A stretch of DNA of 64,000 nucleotides from Macrostomum lignano (lineage: Eukaryota), in NCBI GenBank assembly GCA_002269645.1, contig NIVC01000803.1, positions 1-64,000 of the forward strand, read 5' to 3'. The notes under the pieces were generated by a model, which ran no database searches, was not told the DNA's origin, and worked only from the letters and a program-made list of their open reading frames with translations. Of the stretch, positions 34,905 through 62,344 are shown one piece after another. The position numbers and the translations under genes were made by a program. Positions within the stretch are counted from its first letter, which is position 1. The number at the start of each line of letters is the position of its first letter.

Positions 34905-35418
34905 AACCATAGACAATCTACCATTATCTGCCTCCAGAACCATAGACACAATCTACCATTGTCTGCCTCCAGAACCATAGACACAATCTACCATTGTCTG
35001 CCTCCAAAACCATAGACACATTCTACCATTGTCTGCCTCCAAAACCATAGACACAATCTACCATTGTCTGCCTCCAAAACTATAGACACAATCTACCATT
35101 GTCTGCCTCCAAAACCATAGACACAATCTACCATTGTCTGCCTCCAAAACCATAGACACAATCGACCATTGTCTGCCTCCAAAACCATAGACACAATCGA
35201 CCATTGTCTGCCTCCAAAACCATAGACACAATCGACCATTGTCTGCCTCCAAAACCATAGACAAAATCGACCATTGTCTGCCTCCAAAACCATAGACACA
35301 ATCGACCATTGTCTGCCTCCAAAACCATAGACAAAATCGACCATTGTCTGCCTCCAAAACCATAGACAAAATCGACCATTGTCTGCCTCCAAAACCATAG
35401 ACAAAATCGACCATTGTT
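34905..35418. repeat. 35-bp minisatellite (AAAACCATAGACACAATCGACCATTGTCTGCCTCC); orphan units again at 36402-36470
   Basis: About 14 units, then roughly 1 kb of unrelated sequence, then the repeat resumes. Confidence 0.9.
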
Positions 35419-36939: not shown

Positions 36940-38188
36940 CTATTGAAGCTTGGTATGAAAACACGATCTGTAACACTTTAGGATCAGTTGTTTTGTGTAG
37001 AACTCTCGCTGGTTGAGTGCAAAAATAATGCATATACAAAGCCTCTGATGACTCGGACATCCTGCTCCAGCGTACCAACCAAGCGCGATCATGTTTGCAG
37101 CCGTGAGCAGGATGTAGCTGATGAAGCAGATTGCATTCTTGTGACTCGCTATAAACCTTCCAAGTCTTCTGATCGTTGAGGGCGCATCCGAGGGCGCAGA
37201 TGAGGGAAGCGCTTTCAGAGCGGAAATGAAGGTGAACGCGATGAGGATGAGCATTTGTATCATGAGGAACAGACCGACTAGCGGGATCGTGTTCATGGAC
37301 TTCGGAGCCGACTGGGACGCGATCAGCACGTATAGAAGAATTATTAGTCATGGACATGATGATGGCAATGGACAGGTTCACCGGGTCGCTCTTGTCACCA
37401 GCCAGGAACATGATGCTTGCGAGCAGCGACAGCAGCTCGAACGGGACAATCACCAGCACAGCGTAGTACATCCACCTGCGCTTCAGGTGGAATTGTAAAT
37501 CCACCATATAAAAGTTGAAGTCAAGTGACTTTTCTTTGGACTGTTCACCAGTCACTTTCTCCAGATCCCACTCGCCGACCCGGGAAAGTTCCAGCCCATC
37601 GTACGTGGAGCTGTTGTAGTAAACAGACACCGATAGGTTAAAATGCGTGACGTCGGACGTTCCTGTGCTGACTTGAATGGCGCACAGCTGACTGTCGAAG
37701 GGGAAGTATCTCCCATCGATGGCGCATGCGAACTGCACCACTGCGAATGTGTAAATGCTAGCTTCTCCGGTTGGAAACAATAGAGCATCGGCGAACATTT
37801 CGCCCTTGGAGTTGAGGAACTCGACGTCCGGTAGCCAGAGGCTGTTTCTGTGGAGACGCAGCTGGTGCGGGCTGCCCGGCGATGACGAGTTCCAGGCGAG
37901 TCGAGGGTCAGTCCAGGAAATCCAAATCCAGCCAGAGAACTCCAGCAGCTCCTTTTCGTCCAGGCCGTAGATGGTGTTCAGATAAATCAACACCCTGACG
38001 TCTGTTTGGTAGCCGAAGTAGCTCGGAGACAGCAAGACGTGGCACTGCGGCAGCGCGTGCGGTCTGATGGACTCCGCCAGTGCGCGGCACGCAGGCACGT
38101 CAGCGTTTGTTGCCGGGTCGATGGCGCTTGAGCGCATGATACTGTGAACTAGTAGAAGCAGAGGCAGAATACATTTACAGGTTCGCAT
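36940..38188 (-). pseudogene. Cys-loop ligand-gated ion channel, array copy 1 (frameshifted)
   Basis: Signal peptide, WTDPRLAWN, WLPDV, Cys-loop CAIDGRYFPFDSQLC, M1-M4. A 10-nt insertion AAGAATTATT at 37336-37345 shifts the frame in M2. A 7-aa in-frame deletion follows GEMF. Confidence 0.85.
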
Positions 38189-38479
38189 CTTGCTGGCGCT
38201 CGTCTCGCAGTATGCAATAAAAATTTAGAAATTTGAGGCCTTCAGCCGCCAACAGAGTTCGACTAGCGTTTTTTACACTTACTCAGATTAATAATAATAT
38301 TGCTTGGTACAATTGCAGTTTATTTCATAGTTACTACTCATAGTAAGCCTAAAGACAACATCCATACAACATTAAAATAAATGACACTTTCCTGTCATTA
38401 AGCAATGTAATTGACAGCTTCTTATTATCTGAACACTCGGATAGCAAATGCAGAGTTTTCTGGTCCCGAAAATTGAGGA

Positions 38480-38910
38480 CGTTCTACATCTCTACCGATA
38501 GAAGAGTTCGAACCATGAACTGGGTTGCGACACAATGAGAACTGCGAGACCAAAGATCCCTTAGGAGAACAGCTGACCTGCTCAAAGTGCCATGTGGGGA
38601 GTAGAAAGTGAAGTTCAGTTACTTTTTAAGTGCAGTTGGAACTTTTACTGTATCGTGCTTCTCCGTGATAAACTTGAACAGGAAATCCCAGATAAAGTTC
38701 CGAATTAAAAAAACCTTACTGCAGAAGATTAAATATTTTACCTAATGACTCAAGAAGACATGATGGAAATGCTACCTAGAAAACTGCATCAAAGACATGA
38801 CACAAGCTAGAAAGCAACTTCATGAGGCTTCAGATTGTTACAGAAGAAAACAAGCATGAATAACACGAGATTTCACTCCCGTTAGGTCGAAAAGTATTTT
38901 TATTCACTAG
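38480..38910 (+). mobile_element. Decayed 3' fragment of an L2/CR1-like LINE
   Basis: Paralogous to 50440-50870 (GCGAGACCAAAGATCCCTTA...CAAAGTGCCAT...GTGAAGTTCA; terminal TTCACTCCC.GTTA.GTC). Confidence 0.65.
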
Positions 38911-39013
38911 CTTTTTGAATTTTTGCCTCGAGTAATATCATTAAATACCAGTACCCTCAGCGTGTTTTCAATAATAATCGTAGAAATAGTAATAATATTA
39001 GTATATTTAGATT

Positions 39014-39078
39014 TTGACTTAGCTGCAGGGCTGTCCCGGAGGGGACACAGCGGGAAGGCGCGGGCGCCCATTCCGCTA
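39014..39078 (-). mobile_element. 65-bp 3'-terminal LINE fragment with a 14-bp TSD
   Basis: Flanked by AGTATATTTAGATT at 39000-39013 and 39079-39092. The sequence matches the 3' end of the LINE at 9535-9605. Confidence 0.8.
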
Positions 39079-39349
39079 AGTATATTTAGATTAATAATAA
39101 GAATGTTAATGATGATGCTATTGTTACGTAAACTGCGCCCAACCTAGGATGGTGCATGCTTAAATACAAATTACCTCAAAAACTAGAGGTTCTAGTTGAT
39201 GGAATTTTCCAGAACGGCATCTGTGACACCCAGTTAAGCAAAAAACGATGAGGCTGCGAATGAAGGGCAATTTCTAGCTATGGTTAGCCTTAAATAGGCA
39301 GTTTGCTCTCCTGGCTACTATTTCTGTGTTTTTTGAAGGCTATTAGGCA

Positions 39350-39770
39350 CGGGTCTATGAGAGTTTCCTGCAGGAAGTTTTTCCGCGGAGGTTTTCCCGC
39401 AGGGTTTTTCCAATTGGATTTGAAATCTAGTCTTAGGCTAGTTCTAATCTAGTCCAGCATTGTCTATAGACTGGATTTGACTTGAGATTCCGACAGGAAA
39501 AACCCTGCGGGGAAATCTCGGCGGGGAAACCTCCAGCGGGGAAACCTCCAGCGGGGAAACCTCCAGCGGGGAAACCTCCAGCGGGGAAACCTCCAGCGGG
39601 AAACCTCCAGCGCGGACACCTCCAGCGGGGAAACCTCCAGCGGGAAACCTCCAGCGCGGAAACCTCCAGCGGGGAAACCTCCAGCGGGGAAACCTCCAGC
39701 GGGGAAATATCGGCGGGCAAGCCTCGGCGGGAAAACTTCCTGCGGGAAATTCTCGTGTTCCCTTAGGCAC
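39350..39770. mobile_element. Foldback/MITE-like element with a 15-bp repeat (GGGGAAACCTCCAGC) expanded in one arm
   Basis: GAGAGTTTCCTGCAGGAAGTTTTTCCGC is inverted against GCGGGAAAACTTCCTGCGGGAAATTCTC, and CCCGCAGGGTTTTTCC against GGAAAAACCCTGCGGG. Confidence 0.55.
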
Positions 39771-40154
39771 ATCTTTTAGACCCAGGGTCAGTTGACTTAT
39801 CTTCTCAACATACGCATTAGCGATAATAGCTGCTTTAATGAGGCTGCATTATTGCCTTGAAGCACAATCGTAGTAATGTGGAATCTCTACATAAATGTAC
39901 ACATGATGAATCTTTATGAAAATAAAAAAAATTAATTATATCACGTTCTACGAAATAAATGAGGAAGCATTGAGGAAAATAGCGTTGTGAGAAGAACCAT
40001 GGCATAGTAATCCAGCGCATAGTGAATCTTGGCTGAGGGATGAGATGTTTTTCTCTTAATTTCAAAGTCAAGAGATGTTGCAGCGTCTGATTCACAGCCA
40101 AACCATAGAACAATAAAACCAGTTGGTTCTTGCGCGCAAAGAAATGAATTGAAG

Positions 40155-41309
40155 TCAGATGTATACAAACACAATAATATTAATGATAGTAAGGCTGATG
40201 TAGCTTATAAAGCAGACAACATTTTTGTGCTTTGACAGAAACAAAATCAGTTTCTTCAGTTTAGATGGCGCCTCCGAGGTCGCAGACGAATAAGTGACTT
40301 TTAGAGCAGCGATGAAGGTGAACGCGATGAGAATGAGCATCTGAGCCATGAGGAACAGACCGACTAGCGGGATCGTGTTCATGGACTTCGGAGCCGACTG
40401 GGACGCGATCAGCACGTACAGAGTCATGGACATGATGATGGCGATGGACAGGTTCACCGGGTCGCTCTTGTCACCAGCCAGGAACATGATGCTTGCGAGC
40501 AGCGACAGCAGCTCGAACGGGACAATCACCAGCACAGCGTAGTACATCCACTTGCGCTTCAGGTGGAACTTGATGTTGGCGACATAAAGGCTGTCACCAG
40601 CGGCCACATATCGGGAAAGCGCATGAGTAACGCTTATCAGCTCCCACTCGCCGACCTGGTACAAATCCAGGCCCAGGTTCTCTGATTTGTTGTAGCTGAT
40701 AGACACCGACAATTTGAACCCGGAAGTGTCTGACGATACGGTGCCGAGTTGAGTGGCGCACAGCTGAGTGTCGAACGGGAAGTATCTCACATCGATGGCG
40801 CAGGCAAACTGAACAACTGCGAATGTGTAAATGCCGACTTCCCCAGTAGGAAAAATTACTGCGTCAGTGAACTTGGTGTTTCGGAGGTCAAACATCTCGC
40901 CCTTCGAATTAAGGAAGCCAACGTCTGGTAGCCACACGCTGCCCCGGTCGACTCGCAAGTACTGCGGGCTGCCTGGTGCTGAAGAATTCCAGGCCAGCCG
41001 AGGGTCAGTCCATGAAATCTGGAACCAAGCGGAGAACTCCAGCAGCTCCTTCTCGTCCAGGCCGTAGATAGTTTTCAGCAAGATGTGCACGCTGACGTTC
41101 GTTTGGTAGCCGAACTGGCTGGGGTACATCAACGTGTGGCACTGCGCCAGCGACTGCGGACCGATGGACTCCGACAGCGCTTGACACGCAGCAGTGGCCG
41201 CATCAGTGCTGGCTGCTGAGTTTGACTCTGAAACAGTCGCAAGCAAGAGCAGCACAGGCAGCAGTAATGTTGCTGTTGAAGACATTTTGTTGCCACCGGG
41301 ATGGTTCAT
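40155..41309 (-). CDS. Cys-loop ligand-gated ion channel subunit, array copy 2 (intact, intronless)
   Basis: 384-aa ORF: signal peptide, WTDPRLAWN, WLPDVGFLN, CAIDVRYFPFDTQLC, M1 YYAVLVIVPFELL, M2, M3, short loop, M4. Confidence 0.92.
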   Translation of the reverse strand: MNHPGGNKMSSTATLLLPVLLLLATVSESNSAASTDAATAACQALSESIGPQSLAQCHTLMYPSQFGYQTNVSVHILLKTIYGLDEKELLEFSAWFQISWTDPRLAWNSSAPGSPQYLRVDRGSVWLPDVGFLNSKGEMFDLRNTKFTDAVIFPTGEVGIYTFAVVQFACAIDVRYFPFDTQLCATQLGTVSSDTSGFKLSVSISYNKSENLGLDLYQVGEWELISVTHALSRYVAAGDSLYVANIKFHLKRKWMYYAVLVIVPFELLSLLASIMFLAGDKSDPVNLSIAIIMSMTLYVLIASQSAPKSMNTIPLVGLFLMAQMLILIAFTFIAALKVTYSSATSEAPSKLKKLILFLSKHKNVVCFISYISLTIINIIVFVYI

Positions 41310-41871
41310 ATGCTTATTAACGGTAGATAAGTATTGAACTCAAATATTTGCGTTTGTCGAGCTTTTATCTTGCGTCTTGTGAGAGTTTTTTGCTTTCCCG
41401 AGTTAATTCATGCTAAACTGCTCTGCTCTCAGTGCTATATATGGATAGAGATGAGGGATTAACGCGTTGGTTCTAAACTTTTATTTGCTGCATTTTCATC
41501 TCCACAAGCTTCCTCGAGAGGTTTGGCTTGGTAAAACATTTCCGCATTTCCATTTCAGAGCTGCAGATCTCGCTCTCGTTGTCAAGGTAAATAATTATCT
41601 GCATGCTGGTTGTTCTAGACTAGGGGGGGGGGCACTCAGCTCGTCACGGCTTGTTTCACCATCAATTAATGACATTTCTATTGGCAAATAATGAGTCCTT
41701 AGTTTTCGCAGTATTTTTTAGTCTGCTGAGTACATCTATCTCCATGAACATTAAAGGACGATTCTCTATGGAATAGCCTTTTTTTCGCAGTTGCAAACCA
41801 GTTTTGCCCAATTGTCCAAATATATGGAGAATATGATTACATTGGATCAAATTCTGTTAATTCCCGATAGT

Positions 41872-42202
41872 CAGTGGGCCGTAGCCTGGCCGTGTCAGCG
41901 GTCCAGGTTCGATTCCAAGTGCAGTCACATTAATTTGGGCTAAATTGAATCGCGGCTTGGCTTGCTCGTGCAATTAACGGCCTTGAGGGCCGACCCCAAG
42001 GCACAGTGAAGTGTACATGCCTAACGATAAATAAAGTTAGGGCCGCTGTACACTCCTGTGTGAGTGTGTGCCTGTGCGTATGACTGTGTACGTATCCGCG
42101 CTTGTGTGCCTGCTCAGGGGAGTCGGCGGAATGGGCAGCAATGCCTCTCGCCGGTTGTGTGACAATGTCACTTAGGTGCACACAGCGCCTGCCTCTAATA
42201 AA
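41872..42202 (+). mobile_element. tRNA-derived SINE family A, near full length
   Basis: B box GGTTCGATTCC; shared body; 3' hairpins and CCTGCCTCTAATAAAA; imperfect ~13-bp TSD (AATTCCCGATAGT / ATTTCCCAATAGT). Confidence 0.78.
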
Positions 42203-42299
42203 AATTTCCCAATAGTGGATAGTGGATTGAACTGAGTCTTCCCTATGGGGACAGGCGGGGCTGGTGTATGTTCATGTTATGTTAGTATAAATGACACGA

Positions 42300-43700
42300 G
42301 ATGATGAATTATGAACGGCGACAGAAAAGAGTTCGGCTTAACGATGAAGATCTGCTCAGGATGGCGCAGAGCTCATTCTCTCGTCATATATGATCCAGTG
42401 TCTTAGCAATATTTGCACTGGCATCGGGTTCTGCTCTCAAGACACTAAATGCATGACAGTGTCACAAGAATCCTGCTCAGATAAACGGTTCAAACCAATA
42501 CAGGTTTATTGTCGACACAACGCCGTCGGTAGGCTAGTTTTCTTTACGAGGCAAACTTACCTCTACAGAACAGTCCAGACCAATTTCAAGAAGTTCTTTT
42601 ATGATAACTGTTGATATTTCTTAATGAACAACTTTCCTCATGAAAAGACAAGTGAGTGACTTGAGTTACGTATGAATAGAAGATGCGTTAAAGGTGATCG
42701 AAAAAAGCCCTAGTGGACGTAATGTTGAGTAGTAGATGAAAGGATGAAAACAGCTATATTACTTAAAAGTATCTACTGAAAAGACGTGTTCCCAAGCCAA
42801 AACATGTACACTCAAAGTGGCCTATTTTTTAAAGCTTCCTACTCATTTGGTGAGTAGTATGGATTTAAAATTCAGAGCAAGTGCCGCTCATATGAACCCA
42901 GTCATCATGCAGTGCGTCTTCGCTTTTCTATAGCTTTTTTCAAATCTGATTAATTATTTTCTTGCAATCGCCACGTCGGCCGAATAGGTAAAAATATAAA
43001 GATAGCTATACACTGTAATTGATCGTACTACTGTGCTTTCATTTTATAAATAATCTAAAAGGTATTGCTCTATTGCCCACAGTGCCACCTGTTGAAGGTA
43101 CCGACGGCGTCGGGGTGATGACGGAATTCTGGAGAGACTAGCTGAGGATGTCCAGCAGTTGAGGCTTGCCTACTGCCGAGGCTTGATCAGCGAACTCAGA
43201 GAAATTTGCACAGGGTGTCCATAGTCACCGGGTGCCACCCTGGAAGGAAGGAACTTCTGGAAGGTCCAGAAGTTCCGCCTGAGTAAAGACCAGTGACCAA
43301 AGAAGTCAGAGCTGATGCAGAGACGTGCTGATGAAATTTTTGGAGGCTTGGCAAGGCTGTGCTGAGGCGCAGTGCTGGTTGGCGCACAGGGCTGTATTGA
43401 ATACACTGGCGCTTACGGGAAAAATCCGACGCTCTGGCAGAATTGTTGAATATCTCGATGGTCCGGAGGGTTGGTGACTTGATTATCGTTTGCGAAGGTG
43501 CGCAAGAAAAAGTTAGCCGATGGTCTTGACTTTTGACGCAGCAAAAACTCTTACGGCTCTTACGGCTTGTACATCTATTTCCACTGGATTCTGTTGCTAA
43601 GGTCCAAGCATAACGCTCGTATTTTTTAATCCATTTAGCTCGTACCATATGCCAATTATTCAATGTGCTGGTCAACAGTCAGCCTCATCCATAGCAGACT
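42300..43700. mobile_element. Possible decayed PIF/Harbinger-type transposon remnants
   Basis: Plus-strand YRTVQTNFKKFFYDNC resembles DDE_Tnp_4 transposases. Minus-strand WHMVRAKWIKKYERY...SG resembles a MADF/Myb-like partner ORF. Both are heavily degraded. Confidence 0.28.
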
Positions 43701-43922
43701 GCGCCAAAGCAAACCTACTGGTCAAACATGCAGCAGTTTTCAAACACACGCCCACAGACTACAGGGCCAGATCACATGTTACAAACATCAGAGCCACCAA
43801 GCTGAACAAGTGGGCAGAAGCTGAACTACTGTTGGATGATTTTCTACGGCAAACTTAATGAATAATGTGACAAATAGGAAATTTAAATATTTGACCAGCG
43901 AGCACTGTGAATATAATTATAG

Positions 43923-44753
43923 CAGGGGTTGGCAAACCTTTTAACCTCAAGGGCCAGATAGAGAACCTAGAGACTGACTGTGGGCCCGGAGGAGGGGAGA
44001 GAGGAAGAGAGAAGGGAGGTAAGAGAAAGGAGAGGTGAGATAATAAAGGAGAAGAGAGGAGTGGAGAAGGAGGAGAGAGAAAAGAGAGGAGAGGAGGAGA
44101 GAAAATGAGTGAAAAGAGAGGAGAGAGAGGAGAGAGAAGAGAGGAGAGAGAAGAGGAGGAGAGAGAAGAGGAGAGGAGGAGAGGAGATGAGGAAGGGAGG
44201 AGAGGAGATGAGGAGAGGAGGAGAGGAGATGAGAAGAGAGGAGAGGAGAGAAGATGAGAGGAGAGAGGAGAGGGAAGACGAGACGAGAGGAGAGGAGAGA
44301 GGAGAGAAGATATGATAGAGAAGAGAAGAGAGGTGGGGAGAGATGAGAGGAGAGAGAAGAGAACATAGGAGAGAGGAAGAGAGTAGAGAGGAGATTAGAG
44401 AGAAGAGTGCTGAGAAGCGATATAAACATTGGGTGGGCCGGATTGCTTGTGGGCCGGATTGCTTGTGGGCCGGATTGCTTGTGGGCCGGATTGCTTGTGA
44501 CGGATTTCTTGATTGCTTGTGAGCCGGATTGCTTGTGACGGATTGCTTGATTGCTTGTGGGCCGGATTGCTTGTGGGCCGGATTGCTTGTGACGGATTTC
44601 TTGATTGCTTGTGAGCCGGATTGCTTGTGACGGATTGCTTGATTGCTTGTGGGCCGGATGCAGCACATTGTGAAGTTTCAAAAGACCCCGAGGGTCGGAT
44701 AGAGATGCTCTGCGGGCCGCATGTTGCCCGCGGGCTAGAGTTTGCCGACCCTG
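43923..44753. mobile_element. hAT (Charlie-like) non-autonomous element filled with GA-rich and 16-bp repeats
   Basis: TIRs CAGGGGTTGGCAAAC and GTTTGCCGACCCTG, with subterminal GCGGGCCGCATGTTGCCCGCGGGC. No matching 8-bp TSD was found. Confidence 0.62.
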
Positions 44754-44836
44754 CATGAATTAGAGACTGGGAGAGTAATGGCTGGCGTACGTGTCATCTA
44801 TAAGCAGAACACCAGAATGAAAGTCTTTAACTTACC

Positions 44837-45930
44837 ATGTCTTCACTGGCGGAACTCCGGATTCTTCTGAGCCACACAGTCTTGCTGGTATCAGCCAGCA
44901 CTGAATGGGCTGCCGACGCTGAAGTGGCCGCCTGTCGCGCTCTGTCGGAGTCCATCGGTGCGCAGTCGCGTCAAGCTGTCACCGAAGCACTGTGGCTACG
45001 ATACAAATATTGAATTGTTGTCTTGATGCTCCATGTGAAGACTATATATATGTACGGCCAGGACGAGAAGGAGCTGGAGGAGTTCACTGGCTGGATTCAG
45101 ATGACCTGGACTGACCCCCCGGCTAGCCTGGAGCTCAACGGAAAGTCCACTGAAGCAGCTACGGGTGGAGAGGAACAGCTTGTGGTTGCCGGATGTTGGA
45201 TTCTGGAATACGCGGGAAAGCTGAGAGCTTTATGACGCACGAAATGCAAAGTTGTAGGACGCCACAATGTTCCCCACTGGTAAGGTTAAGATCTATATCT
45301 TCTTTGTAGTCCGATTTGCCTGCATCATACAAGTCGCCAAGTTTCCATTCGACGCGCAAGTCTGCTCAAGTTTCCAAGTCTGCTCCATTCAAATCGGCAC
45401 GATATCTTCGGACTTGACGGTGTTCAATATTACAGTGCAAAATATATTTAAAGAGAATATTGATTCGGTACAGTCTTTGTCAACTATCAGTGAATGGGAC
45501 TTGAAAAATATTTCTCAAACGGACATGATCGACTCTATTGGTGGACAGCAATTCAAAAGTGTGAGGCTTCTCCTTCACCTGGAGCGAAGGTTCATGTATT
45601 ATTGGTGATTGTCTCGTTCCAGCTGCTGTCGCTGCTCGCAAGCATCATGTTCCTGGCTGGTGACAAGAGCGACTCGGTGAACCTGTCCATCGCCATCATC
45701 ATGTCCATGACTCTGTACGTGCTGATCGCGTCCCAGTCGGCTCCGAAGTCCATCCTCATCGCGTTCACCTTCATCGCAGCCGCTCAGAACAAAACAGATA
45801 GATCAGCTGCTCACAAACCGGAGGCTGAGCATAGAAAGCGAGGCTGGAAGACAGTTCTATTGCAACACAGAAACGTGGCTGCTACATTGCAGCAAGTGTC
45901 TGCAATGCATGCGCATTTTTGTTTATATCA
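44837..45930 (+). pseudogene. Cys-loop ligand-gated ion channel, array copy 3 (pseudogene)
   Basis: MSSLAEL...ACRALSESIG start. Multiple frameshifts and stops, an 18-nt duplication in the Cys-loop, a 7-nt deletion in M1 and a 48-nt deletion in the M2-M3 region. Confidence 0.85.
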
Positions 45931-46827
45931 CCAAGTAGCTATTAAGGACAATTTTAACTCCAAAACTTTCTGCAATTAGTGGTGAATGTTTCAATGAGAA
46001 ATCATGGTGACAGAATTTTGCAAAACAAATGCTTCAACTCAGTCAACTCAATCTTTGAAGTTCGGAAATAATTTTTCGAATGCACGACTCCAATGGCTTA
46101 TTTATACTTTAGCTAATATGCTCGTAGTTAGCGCGCATCTCATTTGTACTGTTTCTTAACTTAGTACAAAGTCGAATAAAGCATTAACTAACTAATATTG
46201 CAATAATACACGTTTTAGTGATACGACCCCGATTAGTAAAATAAATCTAAAACTAATTCATGCAAGGACCCGTCAGAACCTGCTGCATGTTTTCTTATGT
46301 AACAGATAAAGTTTCTTTATTTGTTCGCGTAAAATGGTAGAGAGCTGCTTGTTTGAATATTTGCAGCAGTTTTTTAGATCAAAATAGATCAAGATCAAAA
46401 CACTATACTGTAATTGCAAACTTTGATTGGTTGATCGGACAGGTGGGCCATATTGAAACAATTGAAACAATATAACATGCAAAGAACCAGCTATTACAGC
46501 ACAGCAATGACAATCAACGTAGGTAGGATTTAGTGCACGCGGTGCATACTCTCGTAGTGTTGTATTTTTGGGTAAATGAACGAACCGAGAATTCAATTGT
46601 CGGTGCAATCAAGCTTAAAATTGTAGTGGTATAGTAGTACTCGTAGTAGTTGACGGCACAGTAGCAATACTTGCTAAATGGACTACTGTTGCTGAGAGTT
46701 CCTCAATAGTACTATTTCAAGTCAAACAGTTCGTTAAAAAAGTTAATATCGATATCCGATCTCACTTTTGTCAGAAATTGACAAACTTTTTGCTCTATTT
46801 AAGAAAAAATCGTGGCTAAGAGTGCAG

Positions 46828-47995
46828 CTACTTATCGGCGCTCAGGTGGGCGGGCCAGACATAGATGAAAACGAGCGCGTTCACCCCGCTGAGCAGCAGG
46901 TAGGCGCAGCTGCTCACAACAGCCCGGTGCGAAACAAGAAGGTCCAGCAGCTTTTCGTCACCTTTGCACTTTCACGGCTCGCAACCTGCTGTCTGCCAGG
47001 GAAAGCAGCGATGAAGGTGAACGCGATGAGGATGAGCATCTGAGCCATGAGGAACAGACCGACTAGCGGGATCGTGTTCATGGACTTCGGAGCCGACTGG
47101 GACGCGATCAGCACGTACAGAGTCATGGACATGATGATGGCGATGGACAGGTTCACCGGGTCGCTCTTGTCACCAGCCAGGAACATGATGCTTGCGAGCA
47201 GCGACAGCAGCTCGAACGGGACAATCACCAGCACAGCGTAGTACATCCACCTGCGCTTCAGGTGGAACTGGATGTTGACTACCGGGTAGATAGCGCCATT
47301 TGCAGTAAAAAAGTATGAGTTATGATCAACAGACTGCAGGATCCATTCGCCAACTTGGTACAGCTCGAGTCCACTGTCTTCCGAGTAGTTGTAGCTCACC
47401 CTTGCCGAAAAGTTGAGTGCAGCTACGTCAGATGTAACTGTGGCCAGTTGGGTTGCGCAAACCTGGCTGTCAAACGGGAAGGATCTCACATCAAGGGCGC
47501 ATGCGAATTGGACACGCAAAATGCGTAAATAAACGCTTCTCCTGATGCACTAAGAACTACGTCAGAGAATTTCGCGTTTCTAATGTCGAACATCTCGCCC
47601 TTGGAATTCAGAAAGCCGATGTCAGGAAGCCACAGACTGTTCCTGTCGATGCGCATGTACCGTGGACTGCCTCTAGCTGATGAGTTCCAGGCCAGCCGAG
47701 GGTCGGTCCATGTCAGCTCAATCCAGGCAGAGAACTCCAGCAGCTCCTTGTCGTCCAGACCGTAGATGGTCTTCAGTAGTATTTTAACAGCGACGCTGTT
47801 TTCGTGGCCGAAATGGCTCGGCGACAGCATGACGTGGCACTGCGGCAGCGACTGCGGTCCGATGGACTCGGCCAGTGAGCGGCACGCGGCTACGTTGACG
47901 TTCGAGGCCGGATCGATGGTGGCCGACGGCGGGGGGACGACAATCAGAAAACAGTGCAACAGAATGAATCTGGCTGGCTGAATCAGGTGCTGCAT
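46828..47995 (-). CDS. Cys-loop ligand-gated ion channel subunit, array copy 4 (two 1-nt frameshifts: assembly errors or young pseudogene)
   Basis: ORF halves 47995-47520 and 47519-46914 join if one G is restored (AFCVVQFAC). Restoring one A in ACGAAAAGCTG recovers M4 KLLDLLVSHRAVVSSCAYLLLSGVNALVFIYVW...*. Confidence 0.8.
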
Positions 47996-48571
47996 TCTAC
48001 AGTAAGTATCTTCAGAACGTCTGACAATTGGATTTCTCTAAATGGATCGAATGCAAAGCTGCTGGGAAGTGGGAAGCTTCGGTAGCTTTAAACGGTGACA
48101 AATATAGTTAAGAGTTTGCCGCCCAGCAGATTCGCACCAATCAGGAAACTTTGCCCTCCTCATCTTCTATTCAGTGCTTCGCTTTTATCAAGCGTTCTTA
48201 ATATGCTACTTAACTTAAACCATAAAAGTAGCTTCATCACTCTTCACCACTTGCATTGCTACTAATAGTAGTAGGAACTATTGTTTCAAAACTGTTCAAC
48301 AGCGTATTGTACAAAAAAATTAAAGCCTTCCATATTGCGAAAATCCCATATAAAGTGAGTTATAAGCTATACAACTGGAAGATTTGAGATTGGCTCTAAC
48401 CTCCTTTGCTAGATAGAAAGAAAAAGGATGCTGGATAGTTTTGCGTCAACTGGCTTCGCAGCGAATCAGAGCTAACGAATTTATACGAATAAAAATCAGG
48501 TCTCAAGGCAAGGAAACTCCAAGGTTATAAATTTTTTTAAAGTCGTGGATATTCAGTAACAAATCGTAGCC

Positions 48572-49732
48572 ATGCTCACCTGTCTTAGGTCTGTAATCTT
48601 TCGACTGTTGCTGGTAATGGGGAGCAGCGCTTTTTTACGCTTGATCGCCATCAGTCCAGCCTCCAACGCAGACAAGGCAGCATGCCGGGCTCTGGCGGAG
48701 TCCATCGGGCCGCAGTCGCTGCCGCAGTGCCACGTCATACTGTCTCCCAAAAACTTTGGCTACAATACGAACGTCGAGATAGTCATATCGATCAAGACCA
48801 TTTACGGACTGGGAGAGAACGAGCTGCTGGAGTGGTCCGGTTGGACCTTCATCAGCTGGACTGACCCAAGACTGGCTTGGAACGCATCCGAAAGCCAATT
48901 GGATCAACTGCGAGTGGAGCGGAACAGCCTGTGGCTGCCAGACATTGGCTTCTGGAACAGCAAGGAGGAGAGCTTGTACGACATTCGAAATTCTGGCCTC
49001 TTGGAAGTGACGGTGTTTCCCTCCGGCCTCGTGTACGCCTACGTGTACCTGGTGATTCGGTCTGCATGCGCAGTTGACATCAGACTATTTCCATTTGATC
49101 AGCAGCTTTGCACTATAGAGTTGGGAACCATCACTTCTGACTCGAGTGTCTTCAATTACACACTCTTAAGCACCTTATCGATCAACAAGATAGACGGAGT
49201 GTCCTACCAAGTTGGGGAGTGGAATTTGAACGAGCTATCGCAGCACAATCGCACTAATGTTATCAATGGTCAATCGTTTCCTTGCACCGAGATCAAGTTC
49301 CACCTGAAGCGCAGGTGGATGTACTACGCTGTGCTGGTGATTGTCCCGTTCGAGCTGCTGTCGCTGCTCGCAAGCATCATGTTCCTGGCTGGTGACAAGA
49401 GCGACCCGGTGAACCTGTCCATCGCCATCATCATGTCCATGACTCTGTACGTGCTGATCGCGTCCCAGTCGGCTCCGAAGTCCATGAACACGATCCCGCT
49501 AGTCGGTCTGTTCCTCATGGCTCAGATGCTCATCCTCATCGCGTTCACCTTCCTGACCGTTGTTTCTCCAAGGCAATCAAGGCGAAGTGAACGAAGCGCT
49601 AAGATCTTTTTCGACTGCGTTGAGTTCTGTATTAAACATAAAGATATTATTTGTTTTATCAGCTACCTTGTTGTCAGTGGACTTAACGCAGCAGTGTTTC
49701 TGTTTCTTCTACCATATCAAGACAGAAAATAA
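48572..49732 (+). CDS. Cys-loop ligand-gated ion channel subunit, array copy 5 (intact, intronless)
   Basis: 386-aa ORF with signal peptide, WLPDIGFWN, CAVDIRLFPFDQQLC and four TM segments. Confidence 0.92.
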   Translation: MLTCLRSVIFRLLLVMGSSAFLRLIAISPASNADKAACRALAESIGPQSLPQCHVILSPKNFGYNTNVEIVISIKTIYGLGENELLEWSGWTFISWTDPRLAWNASESQLDQLRVERNSLWLPDIGFWNSKEESLYDIRNSGLLEVTVFPSGLVYAYVYLVIRSACAVDIRLFPFDQQLCTIELGTITSDSSVFNYTLLSTLSINKIDGVSYQVGEWNLNELSQHNRTNVINGQSFPCTEIKFHLKRRWMYYAVLVIVPFELLSLLASIMFLAGDKSDPVNLSIAIIMSMTLYVLIASQSAPKSMNTIPLVGLFLMAQMLILIAFTFLTVVSPRQSRRSERSAKIFFDCVEFCIKHKDIICFISYLVVSGLNAAVFLFLLPYQDRK

Positions 49733-49999
49733 GATAACGAGAATGATTAATATCAACAGTAGCGCAACCAGAAATTTTTCAAATTCTGAGGGTAAAGTGG
49801 CGGCGGAGGGGTGGCTCTGTTTTTGGCGAAAATTCGCTTGGTCCCCCTTTGGTTTAAAGGGGGGGGCGACGCCACTGAATATCAAAGATTTGGTTTGGCA
49901 ACAAAATAAATTTGACCATCTCTAAATTTAAACGATAGATCTTGTGCACCTGTTAATCTAAACACGAAGAGGCCCATAGATGCCCACGTAGTTTCATAA

Positions 50000-50870
50000 T
50001 GCTTTTAGAAGAATTAGTTGGCCTTGGAATACAATAACTCACTCTTTAGTACAGTCGAAGTTGAAAGCATGTTCTTGACGCCTCTGAGGCCTGGGGGCTG
50101 TTGTTTCCTAGAACCTGGGCTCGAAGTCTAATCGAGAGGATCAATTTCAGATCTTGCAAATCATTCTCCAAGGCTGACTGCAATACCCAAAATTGAATTA
50201 TTCAGTACCGGGCCTCACTAGCAAATCACTCAGACTCCATCATCTCGAGACAGTGAGGTTGGCATTACAGCTAAAATGAATACTGAAATAATGCGAAATT
50301 TTCAAAATGGACGAGTAACGAAATCAATCAGAACACACAAAGCTACTCGAAGTAGTTTTGAACTAGAATTTACGAGGCACTGAAAGCAAAGAGTAGAGAA
50401 CTCTGAAAATTTAACTCACTACTCAGCCGAAAAGCGTCCTAGAAATTTGCAATCCAGAATTGAAGCGCACCCTGTCACAGTTAGATTAGCAAACCATAAA
50501 CTGGCCTGCGAAACAATGAGGATTGCGAGACCAAAGATCCCTTACGAGAACAGGACCTGCCCAAAGTGCCATATGGGGGTAGAATGTGAAGTTCACTTCC
50601 TGTTTAAGTGCTGTTGGAACTTTTTAGTGGCTCCCCGTGATAAACTTGAACAGTTGAAAGTCTCGGATAAAGTTTCGGATTTTAGAAACCATACGGCAGA
50701 AGAAAAAGTATTTTACCGAATGACTCAAGTAGATAGAGGCATAATGGAAATTTTTGCAAGATTATCAAAGACAAGCTAGAATGCAACTGCCCTGAGGCTT
50801 CAGATTGCCTTGATAAGAGTACTTTGTGCACTAGACTTCACTCCCCCGTTACGTCCAGAAAAATTATTGA
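50000..50870 (+). mobile_element. 3' fragment of an L2/CR1-like LINE
   Basis: RLANHKLACETMR...PYENRTCPKCHMGVECEVHFLFKC is typical of the C-terminal zinc-binding region after RT. A second copy lies at 38.5 kb. Confidence 0.7.
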
Positions 50871-51658
50871 CTGCTTTTTGCATTCATTATTTCGTTGTAT
50901 TTTGCAACTCAACGGTTTCACTACAAGTTGGACACACAAAGCAGCTCAATATTTGCCAATTGCATCCATGGATTTCTGAGAATGTTTGCTGCAGACAACG
51001 CTAGGCTAATGTTTAACAATCCACTTTCAGAATTAATCAATAAATGTATTTGTCGCTATACAGTCCAATTTATATTGTTGGCGAAGACCCCAGCTGTTCA
51101 GTGGTGAAATTCATAAAGAATTGCATCTCAAGATATTTACACTTGCACTAATCATTTGCTAGCTAAGCCGCCTTTAATGTGTTGATTAAATTGAATTGAA
51201 CTGTGTTGTCTGGCACTCTAGCAGCTTCATCAGTGAGTGCAGTTTCTATGGCGGCTGCTTAAATATTTAGTCACGCAGTTGCTAAGCCATTATTTGCTCG
51301 AGAAGCAACAAGTGTACTTCTGTTATTTGCTTTTTGTCAAGCGTTCGGTTATTACTGATAATCAAATTTAACACGAATGCAAAATAGCTATCAGCAAGTC
51401 AAAACCCGTTGCAATAAAGAATAATTTTATTTGAGAAACTACGAAAACATGATAACTTTTCAGAGTCGCTTTACTTTGAAGGAGGGTTACCATATTGAAT
51501 TCAATGTTTGTAGAACGTCAATTATATATACTCTATTCTATGCGAATAATCCCAGCACTATCAATGTGCCATCTTTCCCAAACATAAAGCCGTAAAATTA
51601 TTTGTGCATCTGCTCAAGCTGAAAGGCCAAATAATTAAAAGTTAGGGGGTTACGTATC

Positions 51659-51863
51659 AGATTAAACATGCCTTTTGAGGGAGTTATTTGTATAAATCAC
51701 GAGGGCCTGAGGCCCGAGGGATTTATGAAAATAACTCCCGAAAAAGGCATGTGTAATCTCGTATAAACCATAGACATAAAGACTTGACGGGATATTATTG
51801 AATATTACCAAATAAAATCCCGGGGAACGCAAATATTGTCACGGAAAGTCTTTATTTCTATGG
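51659..51863. repeat. Double-palindrome element (40-bp and 17-bp inverted arms)
   Basis: Arms 51659-51698 and 51720-51759 (5 mismatches) surround GGGCCTGAGGCCC. Arms 51768-51784 and 51847-51863 (1 mismatch) follow. Confidence 0.75.
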
Positions 51864-52003
51864 ATTATGAAAAATTTTTGTGTCGTGATGTCTGTGTTAT
51901 ACATCTTAAGAATCCGTCTTGCAGTGATTAAACGACTCAATGAAACTTTCTGAGATGCCAAGGCTCATGGCTACTCATGCGAAAGTAAATAACAGCAACG
52001 CTC

Positions 52004-53191
52004 TTAAGAGTCCAAATGAGGCCATAAAACCAAAAACGCGACAGAGTTTAGTCCGCTAGTCGACAGGTACAGAAATAAGAGGACTAGGTTCCTTTTTCCG
52101 TCAAGACCCTGCCAGTATTGGCTCAAAGTTGAGCTCGGCCTCGTCCCCTCATTGAAATTTATCAAACGCTTTTGATCGACGGCCGCGATGAAAGTGAAAA
52201 CGATGAGGATGAGCATTTGTATCATGAGGAACAGACCGACTAGCGGGATCGTATTCATGGACTTCGGAGCCGACTGGGACGCGATCAGCACGTACAGAGT
52301 CATGGACATGATGATGGCGATGGACAGGTTCACCGGGTCGCTCTTGTCACCAGCCAGGAACATGATGCTTGCGAGCAGCGACAGCAGCTCGAACGGGACA
52401 ATCACCAGCACAGCGTAGTACATCCACTTGCGCTTCAGGTGAATGTTTATTTTGTGAAAGGGAAAGCTCTCTTCAATACTGTGCAATACAGCCTGTTCTT
52501 GCTTAACTCCCTCCAGCTCCCATTCACCGACACCGAACAGTCCGATGTCATTGCTCATGAGACGGGCAGACAGCGATATGTTTAACTCGTCCGAATATGA
52601 CACAACCGTGCCGACTCCAACTGAACAGACCTGCCGGTCGAAAGGAAACTTTCGCACATTCAGGACGCATCCAAACTTTATCACCAGGTAAATCGGTAGA
52701 ACCACCGTTCCCGTGCTGTACACTGAAACCGAAATAAATTTCGAATTACGGAGATCAAACATATCGTTGTCCTTTCCATTCCAGAAACCAATGTCCGGCA
52801 GCCAGAGACTGTCTCTGTCGATAACTAGATGGTCTACGGCCTTGTCGGACGAGTTCCAGGCCAGCCGAGGGTCGGTCCACGTCAGATCAATCCATGCGGA
52901 CCACTCCAACAGCTCCTTCTCGTCCAAGCCGTACACAGCCATCAATTCGATTGTAACCGAGACGCTGGTGTCGTAGCCGAAACTCTTTGGCGATAGTATC
53001 GCGTGACACTGCGGCAGCGACTGCGGCCCGATGGACTCCGCCAGTGCGCGGCACGCGGCCACGTCAGCATTGGCTGCCGAGTCGATGGCGGCCGAGTGGG
53101 TAGCTGCGCTGGCTACCAGAAGCAGCACAGCTGACAGTGGCAACTGTCCAATGCAGCTCTGCCATGCTGCTGGAAGGGAAATTAGTAACAA
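52004..53191 (-). CDS. Cys-loop ligand-gated ion channel subunit, array copy 6 (start codon unresolved)
   Basis: 395-codon open frame with WLPDIGFWN, CVLNVRKFPFDRQVC and M1-M4. It begins at TTG with an in-frame TAG just upstream; the nearest ATG (53165) is out of frame. Confidence 0.85.
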   Translation of the reverse strand: MLLISLPAAWQSCIGQLPLSAVLLLVASAATHSAAIDSAANADVAACRALAESIGPQSLPQCHAILSPKSFGYDTSVSVTIELMAVYGLDEKELLEWSAWIDLTWTDPRLAWNSSDKAVDHLVIDRDSLWLPDIGFWNGKDNDMFDLRNSKFISVSVYSTGTVVLPIYLVIKFGCVLNVRKFPFDRQVCSVGVGTVVSYSDELNISLSARLMSNDIGLFGVGEWELEGVKQEQAVLHSIEESFPFHKINIHLKRKWMYYAVLVIVPFELLSLLASIMFLAGDKSDPVNLSIAIIMSMTLYVLIASQSAPKSMNTIPLVGLFLMIQMLILIVFTFIAAVDQKRLINFNEGTRPSSTLSQYWQGLDGKRNLVLLFLYLSTSGLNSVAFLVLWPHLDS

Positions 53192-62262: not shown

Positions 62263-62344
62263 TGTCTGATGGCGAAGTCGCTGAAGTTTTGCCGATTGGC
62301 CAAATACACAGCAATGCAGAATATGTAGGGACAGACGGAATAAA

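What the first reader, a model, noticed from the sequence alone, without database searches (positions are those of the whole stretch)
36940..53191. Tandem intronless nAChR-like array lacking the acetylcholine site: candidate chemosensory receptor family
Seen: six single-exon Cys-loop genes (C-x13-C with FPFD, WxPD, WTD) within 16 kb, while neighbouring genes are intron-rich. None has the vicinal Cys-Cys in loop C. The loop B Trp (nAChR GSW) is replaced (GTV, STG, ATV, GTI, GTV), and the loop A Tyr is replaced by Leu or Trp. Loop C is hypervariable: SRYVAAGDSLY, SKEKSLDFNFY, YFFTANGAIY, TNVINGQSF, VLHSIEESF, IDSIGGQQF. Established: cephalopod chemotactile receptors are tandemly arrayed nAChR-derived channels that lost the ACh site and detect environmental compounds. 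Inference: this may be an independent expansion of sensory pLGICs in a different lineage.
Basis: partly seen in the sequence, partly recalled or inferred. Interest (0 to 1): 0.85.

Follow-up and report, generated by a model that had tools for sequence, protein, structure and literature searches.

The report
Flatworm nicotinic-like channel gene cluster
A free-living flatworm (Macrostomum) carries six intronless, nicotinic-receptor-like channel genes, half of them broken, that have lost the acetylcholine-binding residues and the intracellular loop; their ligand-binding halves have diverged freely, while a 260-base pore segment is kept almost identical in all copies by gene conversion.

Summary
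There are six pentameric ligand-gated ion channel (pLGIC) loci. Only G2 and G5 are clearly intact. G6 is open throughout but has no in-frame ATG. G1, G3 and G4 are pseudogenes. The missing loop-C Cys-Cys, the replaced loop-B Trp and loop-A Tyr, and the hypervariable loop C are all confirmed.

The DNA is Macrostomum lignano or a very close relative. The genes belong to a flatworm-specific clade that also holds the schistosome 'AChR-related' subunits Smp_012000 and Smp_101990. Those relatives have introns, a long intracellular loop and, in the Smp_012000-type sequences, the loop-B Trp.

- The M3-M4 intracellular domain is almost absent.
- A ~263-nt block from pre-M1 to the end of M3 is 93-99.6% identical at DNA level in all six copies, pseudogenes included. 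Synonymous divergence there is 0.02-0.14, against 0.8 to saturation in the flanks. GC3 is raised and the shared variants conflict with the extracellular-domain tree. Together this points to domain-restricted gene conversion.

These are most likely cation-channel subunits gated by something other than acetylcholine at a canonical site. A chemosensory role fits the data but was not tested. Intronless tandem nAChR-like expansions are already known in molluscs, so this is a new variant of a known kind.

The parts
36940..38188 (-). G1: pLGIC pseudogene. It has a 10-bp insertion in M2 (37337-37346) that shifts the frame, and a 24-nt in-frame deletion in the extracellular domain.
40155..41309 (-). 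G2: intact single-ORF pLGIC subunit gene of 384 aa, with signal peptide, extracellular domain with Cys-loop, M1-M3, a ~25-aa linker and M4.
   Evidence: ATTAAA lies 316 nt downstream of the stop.
44837..45901 (+). G3: heavily degraded pLGIC pseudogene with frame changes, in-frame stops, an 18-nt insertion after the Cys-loop, and 7-nt and ~49-nt deletions in the block.
46837..47995 (-). G4: pLGIC pseudogene with a 1-nt deletion near 47513. The M4 region is readable only in another frame (46837-46938).
48572..49732 (+). G5: intact single-ORF pLGIC subunit gene of 386 aa. It sits head-to-head with G4, separated by a 576-bp spacer.
   Evidence: AF2 model pLDDT 80.7. Foldseek top hits are nAChR subunits. 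TATAAA-like motif upstream and AATAAA 173 nt downstream.
52004..53191 (-). G6: ORF open through all domains (395 codons) but with no in-frame ATG. It opens directly after a TAG at 53212-53210.
   Evidence: The M. lignano spliced leader ends in ATG (PMC8629364). Use of that ATG here is my inference.
37226..37492 (-). Homogenised pre-M1 to M3 block, G1 copy. 93% identical to G2 counting the 10-bp insertion.
40306..40568 (-). Homogenised pre-M1 to M3 block, G2 copy (reference, 263 nt).
45603..45780 (+). Homogenised block, G3 copy. 98% identical over 151 nt despite an otherwise decayed gene, with an internal ~49-nt deletion.
47005..47267 (-). Homogenised block, G4 copy. 99.2% identical to G2 and 99.6% to G5.
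49298..49552 (+). Homogenised block, G5 copy. 99.2% identical to G2.
52182..52441 (-). Homogenised block, G6 copy. 96.2% identical to G2, with differences concentrated at the 3' end.

Best explanation
This is a Macrostomum-lineage cluster of intronless subunit genes for pentameric ligand-gated ion channels (pLGICs). They derive from a flatworm-specific, nAChR-like clade whose schistosome members are Smp_012000 and Smp_101990, annotated 'AChR-related' and 'putative nAChR subunit'.

Two copies are intact (G2, G5). One is open but has no start codon (G6). Three are pseudogenes (G1, G3, G4). That mix is a birth-and-death pattern.

Each encoded subunit keeps the full gating apparatus: Cys-loop FPFD, the pre-M1 Arg, the M2-M3 Pro and TrpD. 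The M2 helix has acidic residues at -4' and -1', so the predicted product is a pentameric cation channel (inferred). The principal-face acetylcholine box has been dismantled: TrpB and TyrA are replaced and there is no Cys-Cys. The M3-M4 intracellular domain is reduced to about 13 disordered residues plus a short helix.

The extracellular ligand-binding domains have diverged to 40-60% identity, fastest in loops C and F. A ~263-nt segment from pre-M1 to the end of M3 is kept nearly identical in all six copies by repeated, GC-biased gene conversion. The result is a set of variable ligand-binding modules on one constant pore and gating module.

I infer that the channels respond to ligand(s) other than acetylcholine bound in the canonical way. 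I also infer that the shared pore module keeps conductance, gating and co-assembly uniform. The single most likely biological role is a peripheral or environmental chemoreceptor-like one. I put that at only about one in three, and it is inference rather than something shown here.
For: Family and fold:
- Pfam LBD hits.
- Best solved-structure matches by sequence are alpha7, beta4 and beta2 nAChR subunits, E ~1e-33.
- The AF2 model of G5 has pLDDT 80.7, a beta-sandwich and four TM helices.
- Foldseek top 48 hits are all nAChR subunits, E ~1e-22.

Organism: the neighbouring P450 ORF is 97-98% identical to M. lignano proteins (tblastn of those proteins back onto the window gives 96.5-97.6%).

Clade:
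- The exhaustive HMM search finds a truncated M. lignano protein as best hit (46-47% identity). Next come trematode and monogenean proteins and three short-ICD proteins from Logan assemblies, at about 28-36%.
- The NJ tree gives 100% bootstrap for this clade.
- The schistosome members were identified by exact motif matches in the supplement of PMC6151654.
- Smp_012000 is placed among nAChRs with a GDR filter in PMC9874803.

Lost ACh box and M2 residues: alpha7 alignment.

Missing ICD.

Intron loss: the Heterobilharzia orthologue spans 13.2 kb with at least 5 exons.

Gene conversion:
- The block is 93-99.6% identical while the flanks are 40-79%.
- Block dS is 0.016-0.14, against 0.77 to saturation in the extracellular domain. 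P < 1e-8 even with a conservative expectation.
- The block is 98% conserved even in the decayed pseudogene G3.
- GC3 is 0.83-0.89 in the block, 0.63-0.69 in the extracellular domain and 0.34-0.62 in the C-terminal part.
- Shared variants (G1+G6; G2+G6) contradict the extracellular-domain tree, where G1 groups with G2 and G4 at 97%.

Purifying selection on the extracellular domain: omega 0.2-0.45.
Against: - No expression, ligand or current data exist for any copy.
- The exact proteins are absent from the public protein collections searched. That could mean low expression or no function.
- Only two copies are unambiguously intact.
- The frameshifts in G4, and the missing ATG in G6, could partly be assembly errors, or the reverse.
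- dS outside the block is saturated, so omega values are rough and diversifying selection cannot be tested.
- The phylogeny is a 33-sequence NJ tree without cephalopod CR or SmACC sequences. The position of the flatworm clade relative to 5-HT3 and nAChR is unresolved (57% and 33% support).
- Cation selectivity is read from one acidic residue next to an unusual Pro at 0' and Met at 9'.
- TrpD, TyrC2 or Phe, and Trp at loop A in G3, G5 and G6 leave room for a cation-pi site, and so for an amine or even a cholinergic ligand.
Confidence: 0.7

Rival explanations
1. This is a dedicated chemosensory receptor family, convergent with cephalopod chemotactile receptors. It would be expressed in peripheral sensory cells and gated by environmental compounds.
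For: - Loss of the ACh signature residues.
- Intronless, clustered, half pseudogenes.
- Loop C evolves at a neutral rate and loop F close to it.
- Loss of the intracellular domain that synaptic receptors use for anchoring (the functional link is general knowledge).
- The genes are absent from transcriptome-based public protein sets, as expected for genes expressed in rare cells.
- Cephalopod CRs set the precedent: intronless and nAChR-derived (PMC11526382).
Against: - No expression or ligand evidence.
- Only six loci are seen and 2-3 look usable.
- Overall omega is below 0.5.
- Orphan nAChR-like expansions in molluscs and annelids have the same sequence hallmarks without a shown sensory role (PMC6896357; Alpo4, PMC10338036).
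- The neodermatan relatives sampled appear in low copy number with long intracellular loops. That looks more neuronal.
Confidence: 0.3
2. These are internal, neuronal or neuromuscular subunits. They would be either orphan transmitter or modulator receptors, or non-alpha accessory subunits that supply only the complementary face to ACh-binding alpha subunits encoded elsewhere.
For: - TrpD on the complementary face is invariant, and loops D and E are under moderate constraint.
- Lack of a loop-C Cys-Cys is the definition of non-alpha subunits (PMC10338036).
- Nearest solved relatives include beta2, beta4, delta, gamma and epsilon subunits.
- An identical M1-M3 would suit interchangeable partners in heteromers.
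Against: - The vertebrate non-alpha subunits I recall keep the loop-B Trp, which is lost here. The trematode Smp_012000-type relatives also keep it.
- Absence of the intracellular domain is atypical for synaptic receptors.
- Pseudogene turnover is high for a core neurotransmission component.
Confidence: 0.3
3. The whole cluster is a decaying retrogene family with no present function. The open ORFs are simply the youngest or luckiest copies.
For: - Three of six copies are broken and G6 lacks an ATG.
- No public protein or transcript-derived record of any copy.
Against: - Extracellular-domain omega is 0.2-0.45 across very old duplicates with dS above 0.8.
- 384-386-codon ORFs have been kept open.
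- All invariant gating residues of the superfamily are retained.
- Polyadenylation signals lie 148-368 nt downstream.
Confidence: 0.08
4. The near-identity of the M1-M3 block is not gene conversion. It would instead reflect extreme purifying selection, a nucleotide-level element such as an RNA structure or small-RNA target, or an assembly or polishing artefact.
For: M1-M3 is the most conserved protein segment in all pLGICs. All copies show the same sharp boundaries at domain borders.
Against: - Synonymous sites are also frozen, with dS 0.02-0.14 against more than 0.8 elsewhere.
- The block is conserved in pseudogenes G1 and G3, where protein-level selection is gone.
- The RNA fold z-score is +0.70 and there is no Rfam hit.
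- Copy-specific and incongruently shared variants exist, which argues against collapse during polishing.
- The paralogue P0082 from the same genus differs in M1.
Confidence: 0.05

Closest known systems
Schistosome/neodermatan 'AChR-related' subunits (Smp_012000, S. haematobium A_06497, Smp_101990; Fasciola THD26242 'putative nAChR subunit')
   Same: Same 100%-bootstrap clade. They share the M2-M3 motif AP(K/R)SM..P..G and an acidic -1' residue (GDR against GDKSD-P). They also lack the loop-C Cys-Cys and have no Tyr at loop A.
   Different: The trematode genes have introns (at least 5 exons) and a ~150-450-aa M3-M4 loop. The Smp_012000-type sequences keep the loop-B Trp and Leu 9'; Smp_101990 lacks that Trp. 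They appear in low copy number. The Macrostomum genes are intronless and clustered, lack the ICD and TrpB, and have Met 9'. No function has been reported for either group, as far as the papers read show.
Cephalopod chemotactile receptors (CRs; CRT1, CRB1)
   Same: Derived from nAChRs, intronless, locally expanded, lacking the ACh signature motifs, and cation channels that form homo- or heteropentamers (PMC11526382, PMC10338036).
   Different: The lineage and the parent clade differ (flatworm clade). No sensory expression or ligand is known here. The ICD is essentially absent. The pore module is homogenised by gene conversion. I found no such report for CRs, but I did not check specifically.
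Expanded intronless tandem nAChR genes of molluscs (Jiao et al. 2019, PMC6896357)
   Same: Lineage-specific expansion by presumed retroposition followed by local duplication, with divergent sequences and unknown ligands.
   Different: That study covered no flatworms and stated that, among the species it sampled, intronless nAChRs occur only in molluscs. The array here is small, and domain-restricted concerted evolution is not described there (one search found 0 occurrences of 'gene conversion').
Alpo4, orphan nAChR-like receptor of the annelid Alvinella (PDB 8BX5)
   Same: Lophotrochozoan orphan with no loop-C Cys-Cys and no response to ACh or 5-HT. It matches G2 over residues 56-366 at E ~2e-26 (PMC10338036).
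   Different: [quoted passage not shown] It is not in the flatworm clade.
Schistosome ACh-gated chloride channels (SmACC-1/2)
   Same: Flatworm-specific offshoot of the nAChR family.
   Different: SmACCs carry the PAR/PAK anion motif and are gated by cholinergic agonists (PMC6151654, PMC9874803). The window genes have D at -1' and lack the ACh box.
Segment-restricted gene conversion in clustered receptor genes (for example protocadherin clusters; recalled from memory, not checked here)
   Same: Variable recognition domains alongside homogenised constant segments within a tandem cluster.
   Different: A different protein family. Each gene here carries its own copy of the constant module inside a single exon.

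Membership tests
Cys-loop / pentameric ligand-gated ion channel superfamily | Neur_chan_LBD extracellular domain above the Pfam gathering score | tested here: met
   93-112 bits against a cut-off of 26 for G1, G2, G5 and G6. The two G4 fragments score 36 and 55 bits.
Cys-loop / pentameric ligand-gated ion channel superfamily | C-x13-C Cys-loop containing F/YPxD | tested here: met
   For example G2 CAIDVRYFPFDTQLC. Present in all six copies; G3 has a duplication just after it.
Cys-loop / pentameric ligand-gated ion channel superfamily | Four transmembrane helices M1-M4 following the beta-sandwich | tested here: met
   AF2 model of G5 has helices at 249-276, 279-300, 310-330 and 357-385. Foldseek hits to nAChR chains reach E ~1e-23. 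Pfam Neur_chan_memb alone is below its cut-off (21-25 against 28.1 bits) because the ICD part of the model is missing.
ACh-binding (alpha-type) nicotinic receptor subunit | Vicinal Cys-Cys at the tip of loop C | tested here: not met
   No copy has it.
ACh-binding (alpha-type) nicotinic receptor subunit | Aromatic box: TyrA, TrpB, TyrC1, TyrC2 (+TrpD) | tested here: not met
   TyrA is replaced by Leu or Trp. TrpB is replaced by Val, Gly or Ile. TyrC1 is variable. TyrC2 is Tyr or Phe. TrpD is kept.
ACh-binding (alpha-type) nicotinic receptor subunit | Currents gated by acetylcholine | not testable with these tools
   Needs heterologous expression.
Cation-selective nAChR/5-HT3 branch | Acidic residue at M2 -1' and no PAR/PAK anion motif | tested here: met
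   In G-D-K-S-D-P-V-N the second Asp aligns to alpha7 Glu -1'. Motif logic follows PMC9874803.
Flatworm 'AChR-related' clade (Smp_012000/Smp_101990 type) | Monophyly with the neodermatan sequences | tested here: met
   100% NJ bootstrap. These are the best non-Macrostomum hits in the exhaustive search.
Flatworm 'AChR-related' clade (Smp_012000/Smp_101990 type) | One-to-one orthology with a conserved single-copy subunit | tested here: not met
   The window copies and M. lignano A0A1I8I4U5 form their own subclade at 94%, with local duplication.
Cephalopod chemotactile receptors | Membership of the cephalopod CR clade | tested here: inconclusive
   No CR sequence was available to include. The flatworm clade excludes the two Mytilus nAChR-like sequences sampled, which makes shared origin unlikely.
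Cephalopod chemotactile receptors | Expression in a sensory epithelium and activation by environmental, poorly soluble compounds | not testable with these tools
   Needs in situ or single-cell data and electrophysiology.
Cephalopod chemotactile receptors | Intronless, clustered, ACh-site residues lost | tested here: met
   CR properties as described in PMC11526382.
Schistosome ACh-gated chloride channels (SmACC) | PAR/PAK anion-selectivity motif before M2 | tested here: not met
   The sequence is GDKSDPV.

The most novel reading that the evidence does not exclude
A second, independent conversion of a nicotinic-type neurotransmitter receptor into a peripheral chemoreceptor family, this time in free-living flatworms. 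The family would be built as a modular system: rapidly diversifying ligand-binding domains mounted on a single pore and gating cassette without an intracellular domain. That cassette is held identical across paralogues by gene conversion, so that any combination of subunits assembles into the same channel.
Probability: 0.25. Interest if true: 0.8.

Novelty: new variant of a known kind. Interest (0 to 1): 0.6.

Why it matters
If the genes are expressed and functional, they offer three things:
- A compact, naturally ICD-less metazoan Cys-loop receptor with an unknown non-cholinergic ligand.
- A test of whether the transition from neurotransmitter receptor to chemoreceptor seen in cephalopods has recurred in another phylum.
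- A clean natural example of domain-restricted concerted evolution in an ion-channel family, with a constant pore and variable sensor. This bears on how heteromeric channels stay compatible while their ligand sites diversify.

The relatives in schistosomes and liver flukes (Smp_012000 and Smp_101990 type) are uncharacterised and divergent from host receptors. Deorphanising the family in a tractable free-living model could therefore also inform parasite pharmacology.

Tried and rejected
- The first word-indexed homology search with G2 returned only distant nAChR and 5-HT3 proteins (up to 30% identity). A second, with a family alignment, returned just three proteins because of the candidate cap.
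- Exact-sequence look-ups of G2, G5 and the M. lignano relative P0082 found nothing.
- I could not name the organisms behind the three Logan homologues. An accession search showed only that ERR14224704 is cited in a coral-microbiome study.
- My first NJ and bootstrap script returned no answer, so I rewrote it.
- I suspected that the trematode relatives might be ShAR2beta (from memory). The supplement of PMC6151654 showed they are Smp_012000, A_06497 and Smp_101990 instead.
- An RNA-structure or known-RNA explanation for the conserved block found no support: z = +0.70 and no Rfam hit.
- Antisense ORFs overlapping the block (37226-37498, 52188-52418) are inconsistent between copies. I treated them as a by-product of GC3-rich codons.
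- Self-comparison found no extended duplication units or conserved promoters beyond the coding regions.
- The van Giesen 2020 paper was not held, so CR properties are cited from reviews.
- Positive selection could not be assessed because dS is saturated.

Full report
**What is there.** A tblastn of the intact proteins against the window finds exactly six related loci between 36.9 and 53.2 kb:
- G1 36940-38188 (-)
- G2 40155-41309 (-)
- G3 44837-45901 (+)
- G4 46837-47995 (-)
- G5 48572-49732 (+)
- G6 52004-53191 (-)

Pfam assigns the neurotransmitter-gated channel ligand-binding domain, at E = 2e-26 to 4e-32 for the near-full-length ORFs and 1e-14 and 7.5e-9 for the two G4 fragments. G2 and G5 are complete single ORFs of 384 and 386 aa, running from ATG through a signal peptide, an extracellular domain, M1-M3, a short linker and M4 to the stop. 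Polyadenylation signals follow 148-368 nt downstream of the G1, G2, G5 and G6 ORFs.

G6 is open for 395 codons but has no in-frame ATG. Its reading frame opens directly after a TAG at 53212-53210.

G1 carries a 10-bp insertion inside M2 (37337-37346) and a 24-nt in-frame deletion in the extracellular domain. G4 has a 1-nt deletion near 47513, and its M4 is readable only in another frame. G3 has several frame changes, in-frame stops, an 18-nt insertion after the Cys-loop and two deletions in the transmembrane part.

So 'six genes' is really two or three genes and three pseudogenes, in mixed orientation.

I aligned G2 to human alpha7 and the copies to each other.
- The Cys-loop is C-x13-C with FPFD.
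- Loop A reads WLPD(V/I)GF(L/W)N, so TyrA is replaced by Leu or Trp.
- Loop B reads GTV, STG, ATV, GTI, GTV, so TrpB is lost.
- Loop C has no Cys-Cys and is the most variable segment, with pN/pS 0.98.
- Loop F has pN/pS 0.79. Most of the rest of the extracellular domain lies between 0.17 and 0.55.
- TrpD is invariant, and the TyrC2 position is Tyr or Phe.

These claims are confirmed. Overall omega in the extracellular domain is 0.2-0.45 with dS from 0.77 to saturation. This shows purifying selection on old duplicates. It is no evidence for or against positive selection.

**Organism.** The P450 ORF at 15535-16560 is 97-98% identical to Macrostomum lignano UniProt proteins (96.5-97.6% when those proteins are run back onto the window). 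The window is therefore from this free-living flatworm or a very close relative.

**Relatives.** None of the window's channel proteins is in the public collections searched. The exhaustive profile search of 1.84 billion representatives gave these results:
- The best hit is a truncated 273-aa M. lignano protein (UniRef A0A1I8I4U5, 46-47% identity).
- Next come trematode and monogenean proteins, at about 31-36% identity.
- Three proteins of ~390 aa with short ICDs come from Logan assemblies of unknown organisms, at about 28-36%.
- Ordinary nAChR subunits follow at 25-30%.

An NJ tree puts the window genes, the M. lignano protein, the Logan proteins and the neodermatan proteins in one clade with 100% bootstrap. 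That clade is separate from the vertebrate, mollusc, annelid, insect and cnidarian nAChR-like sequences sampled. Its position relative to 5-HT3 receptors is unresolved.

Exact motif matches in the supplement of PMC6151654 identify the schistosome members as Smp_012000, S. haematobium A_06497 ('AChR-related') and Smp_101990 ('putative nAChR subunit'). PMC9874803 places Smp_012000 among the nAChRs with a GDR selectivity motif. I found no functional data for them.

The Smp_012000-type trematode sequences keep the loop-B Trp and Leu 9' and have intracellular loops of about 150-450 aa. Smp_101990 lacks that Trp. The Heterobilharzia gene spans 13.2 kb with at least five exons. The Macrostomum genes are thus a derived branch of this flatworm clade that is intronless, lacks the ICD and has lost TrpB.

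**Structure and pore.** AlphaFold2 on G5 gives pLDDT 80.7 and pTM 0.69. It predicts the N-terminal helix, the beta-sandwich, M1-M3, about 13 disordered residues, a short helix and M4. There is essentially no intracellular domain. Foldseek against the PDB returns nAChR subunits in the first 48 places, at E ~1e-22.

On the alpha7 numbering, M2 reads D-4', D-1', P0', N2', A6', M9', L13', L16', Q20'. The acidic -1' residue and the absence of a PAR motif predict cation selectivity. That is an inference, following the motif logic in PMC9874803. Residues invariant across the superfamily are all present in the intact copies: the Cys-loop FPFD, the pre-M1 Arg, the M1 Pro and the M2-M3 Pro.

A sliding-window comparison of the six loci shows about 40-70% nucleotide identity in most windows. 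The exception is a ~260-nt stretch at 95-99%. The alignment and blastn place the stretch from the FHLKR pre-M1 motif to the end of M3, at these coordinates:
- G1 37226-37492
- G2 40306-40568
- G3 45603-45780
- G4 47005-47267
- G5 49298-49552
- G6 52182-52441

Pairwise identities are 99.2-99.6% among G2, G4 and G5. G6 and G1 are 96% and 93% identical to these, counting the G1 insertion. The decayed pseudogene G3 is 98% identical over the part it retains.

Several lines point to repeated, GC-biased gene conversion confined to the pore module, rather than protein-level constraint:
- Nei-Gojobori dS in the block is 0.016-0.14, against 0.77 to saturation in the extracellular and C-terminal parts. 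At most 8 synonymous differences are seen where about 30-38 are expected (P < 1e-8).
- GC3 is 0.83-0.89 in the block, 0.63-0.69 in the extracellular domain and 0.34-0.62 in the C-terminal part.
- The few variants in the block are shared incongruently with the extracellular-domain tree. G1 and G6 share ATA..A at block positions 223-228. G2 and G6 share A at position 17. In the extracellular-domain tree G1 groups with G2 and G4 at 97%.
- The block RNA shows no unusual folding (z = +0.70) and no Rfam family matches the region.
- The M. lignano paralogue outside this window differs in M1: KPLYYAVLILLPFEM against KWMYYAVLVIVPFELL.

The sharp boundaries at the domain borders can arise in two ways. 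Selection may act against conversion tracts that erase extracellular-domain diversity. Alternatively, the flanks may now be too divergent to support heteroduplex extension. I cannot tell which applies.

**Mechanism proposed.**
- Shown: these are nAChR-type pLGIC subunit genes with variable ligand-binding domains and one shared pore and gating module. The canonical principal-face ACh determinants and the intracellular domain are gone.
- Inferred: the intact copies form pentameric cation channels. Ligand binds at extracellular-domain interfaces, with specificity set largely by loops C and F. Binding is coupled through the conserved Cys-loop, pre-M1 and M2-M3 elements to an identical M2 pore. The shared M1-M3 keeps conductance, gating and inter-subunit packing uniform, so paralogues could co-assemble freely.
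- Not shown: the ligand is probably not acetylcholine bound in the classical way, because the cation-pi Trp of loop B is absent.

A peripheral chemoreceptor-like role is the single most likely biological assignment, at about one in three. The points in its favour are the loss of the synaptic-anchoring loop, the birth-and-death turnover, the neutral loop C and the absence from transcript-based gene sets. An internal orphan or accessory-subunit role is about equally likely. TrpD is conserved, and lack of the Cys-Cys is simply the non-alpha condition.

**Comparison with what is known.** Intronless tandem expansions of nAChR-like genes are documented in molluscs (PMC6896357). Orphan nAChR-like receptors lacking signature motifs are known in annelids (Alpo4, PMC10338036). 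Cephalopod CRs are the proven case of a sensory offshoot (PMC11526382).

The flatworm cluster is a further, phylogenetically separate instance. Three traits are unusual here. The intracellular domain is nearly eliminated. TrpB has been lost within a clade whose trematode Smp_012000-type members keep it. And the pore module alone evolves in concert. A full-text search for 'pentameric ligand-gated ion channel' together with 'gene conversion' found nothing relevant.

**Verdict.** The feature is real, and richer than described in one respect and poorer in another, since half the copies are dead. The sensory interpretation is plausible but untested. I rate the cluster a new variant of a known kind, of moderate to good interest, mainly for the constant-pore, variable-sensor architecture and as a tractable entry to an uncharacterised flatworm channel clade.

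Noticed in passing
window 53190-53215 (- strand), upstream edge of G6: G6 has no in-frame ATG. Its ORF opens right after a TAG at 53212-53210. The M. lignano spliced leader ends in ...TTGCATG (PMC8629364). Trans-splicing to the AG of that TAG would therefore supply an in-frame AUG, giving MPLYYLCLLLISLPAAW.... This is speculative. The alternative is that the start codon has been lost.
   Followed up: partly
window, N-terminal helix region of all copies (e.g. G2 residues 40-57; about 41140-41190): A conserved motif ACRALAESIGPQSLPQCH with two invariant cysteines precedes the beta-sandwich in all window copies and in M. lignano A0A1I8I4U5. It is absent from the trematode and Logan relatives. It may be an extra disulfide specific to the genus. 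The AF2 model is of low confidence here (residues 48-54).
   Followed up: no
window 47996-48571: G4 (-) and G5 (+) sit head-to-head, separated by only 576 bp. A TATAAA-like motif lies about 45 nt before the G5 ATG. This may be a shared bidirectional promoter region.
   Followed up: no
window 37226-37498 (+) and 52188-52418 (+): ORFs of 76-90 codons run antisense across the homogenised block in G1 and G6, but not consistently in the other copies. They are probably a by-product of GC3-rich sense codons.
   Followed up: partly
window 9642-12734 (-): Fragments of a non-LTR retrotransposon: ORFs with RVT_1 (E = 1.6e-19) and RNase H (E = 2.9e-12) domains, in overlapping, broken frames.
   Followed up: partly
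window 14973-16560 (+): A cytochrome P450 gene read in three frames (two short introns or frameshifts). Its last part is 96.5-98% identical to M. lignano A0A1I8I3R8 and A0A1I8H312. This is what identified the organism.
   Followed up: yes
window 4600-8200, 16970-22010, 30100-31280, 33440-33810, 34899-35417, 39507-39746, 43989-44659, 62180-63780: The density of mini- and microsatellite arrays is very high. Examples are a 35-bp unit repeated 15 times at 34899-35417, a 15-bp unit repeated 16 times at 39507-39746, and a long trinucleotide run at 21529-22005. These arrays produce many spurious long ORFs.
   Followed up: partly
window 38511-38837 and 50492-50807; also 34478-34638 and 42058-42205: Dispersed repeats of about 150-330 bp, 78-85% identical, lie in the spacers of the cluster. 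They are probably a transposable-element family and not part of the gene duplication units.
   Followed up: no
window 27590-28657 (-) and 1586-1975 (+): A 355-codon GC-rich ORF has a C2 domain (E = 1.6e-9). A short ORF has an FSIP1-family match (E = 1.6e-8). These are likely exons of neighbouring genes.
   Followed up: partly
L001 (DRR639838), L002 (ERR14224704), L003 (DRR639055): Single-ORF homologues of ~390 aa with the same short M3-M4 linker and no loop-B Trp occur in three public read-set assemblies of unidentified organisms. One of these runs is cited in a coral-microbiome study (PMC13083261). The ICD-less subfamily therefore extends beyond this genome.
   Followed up: partly
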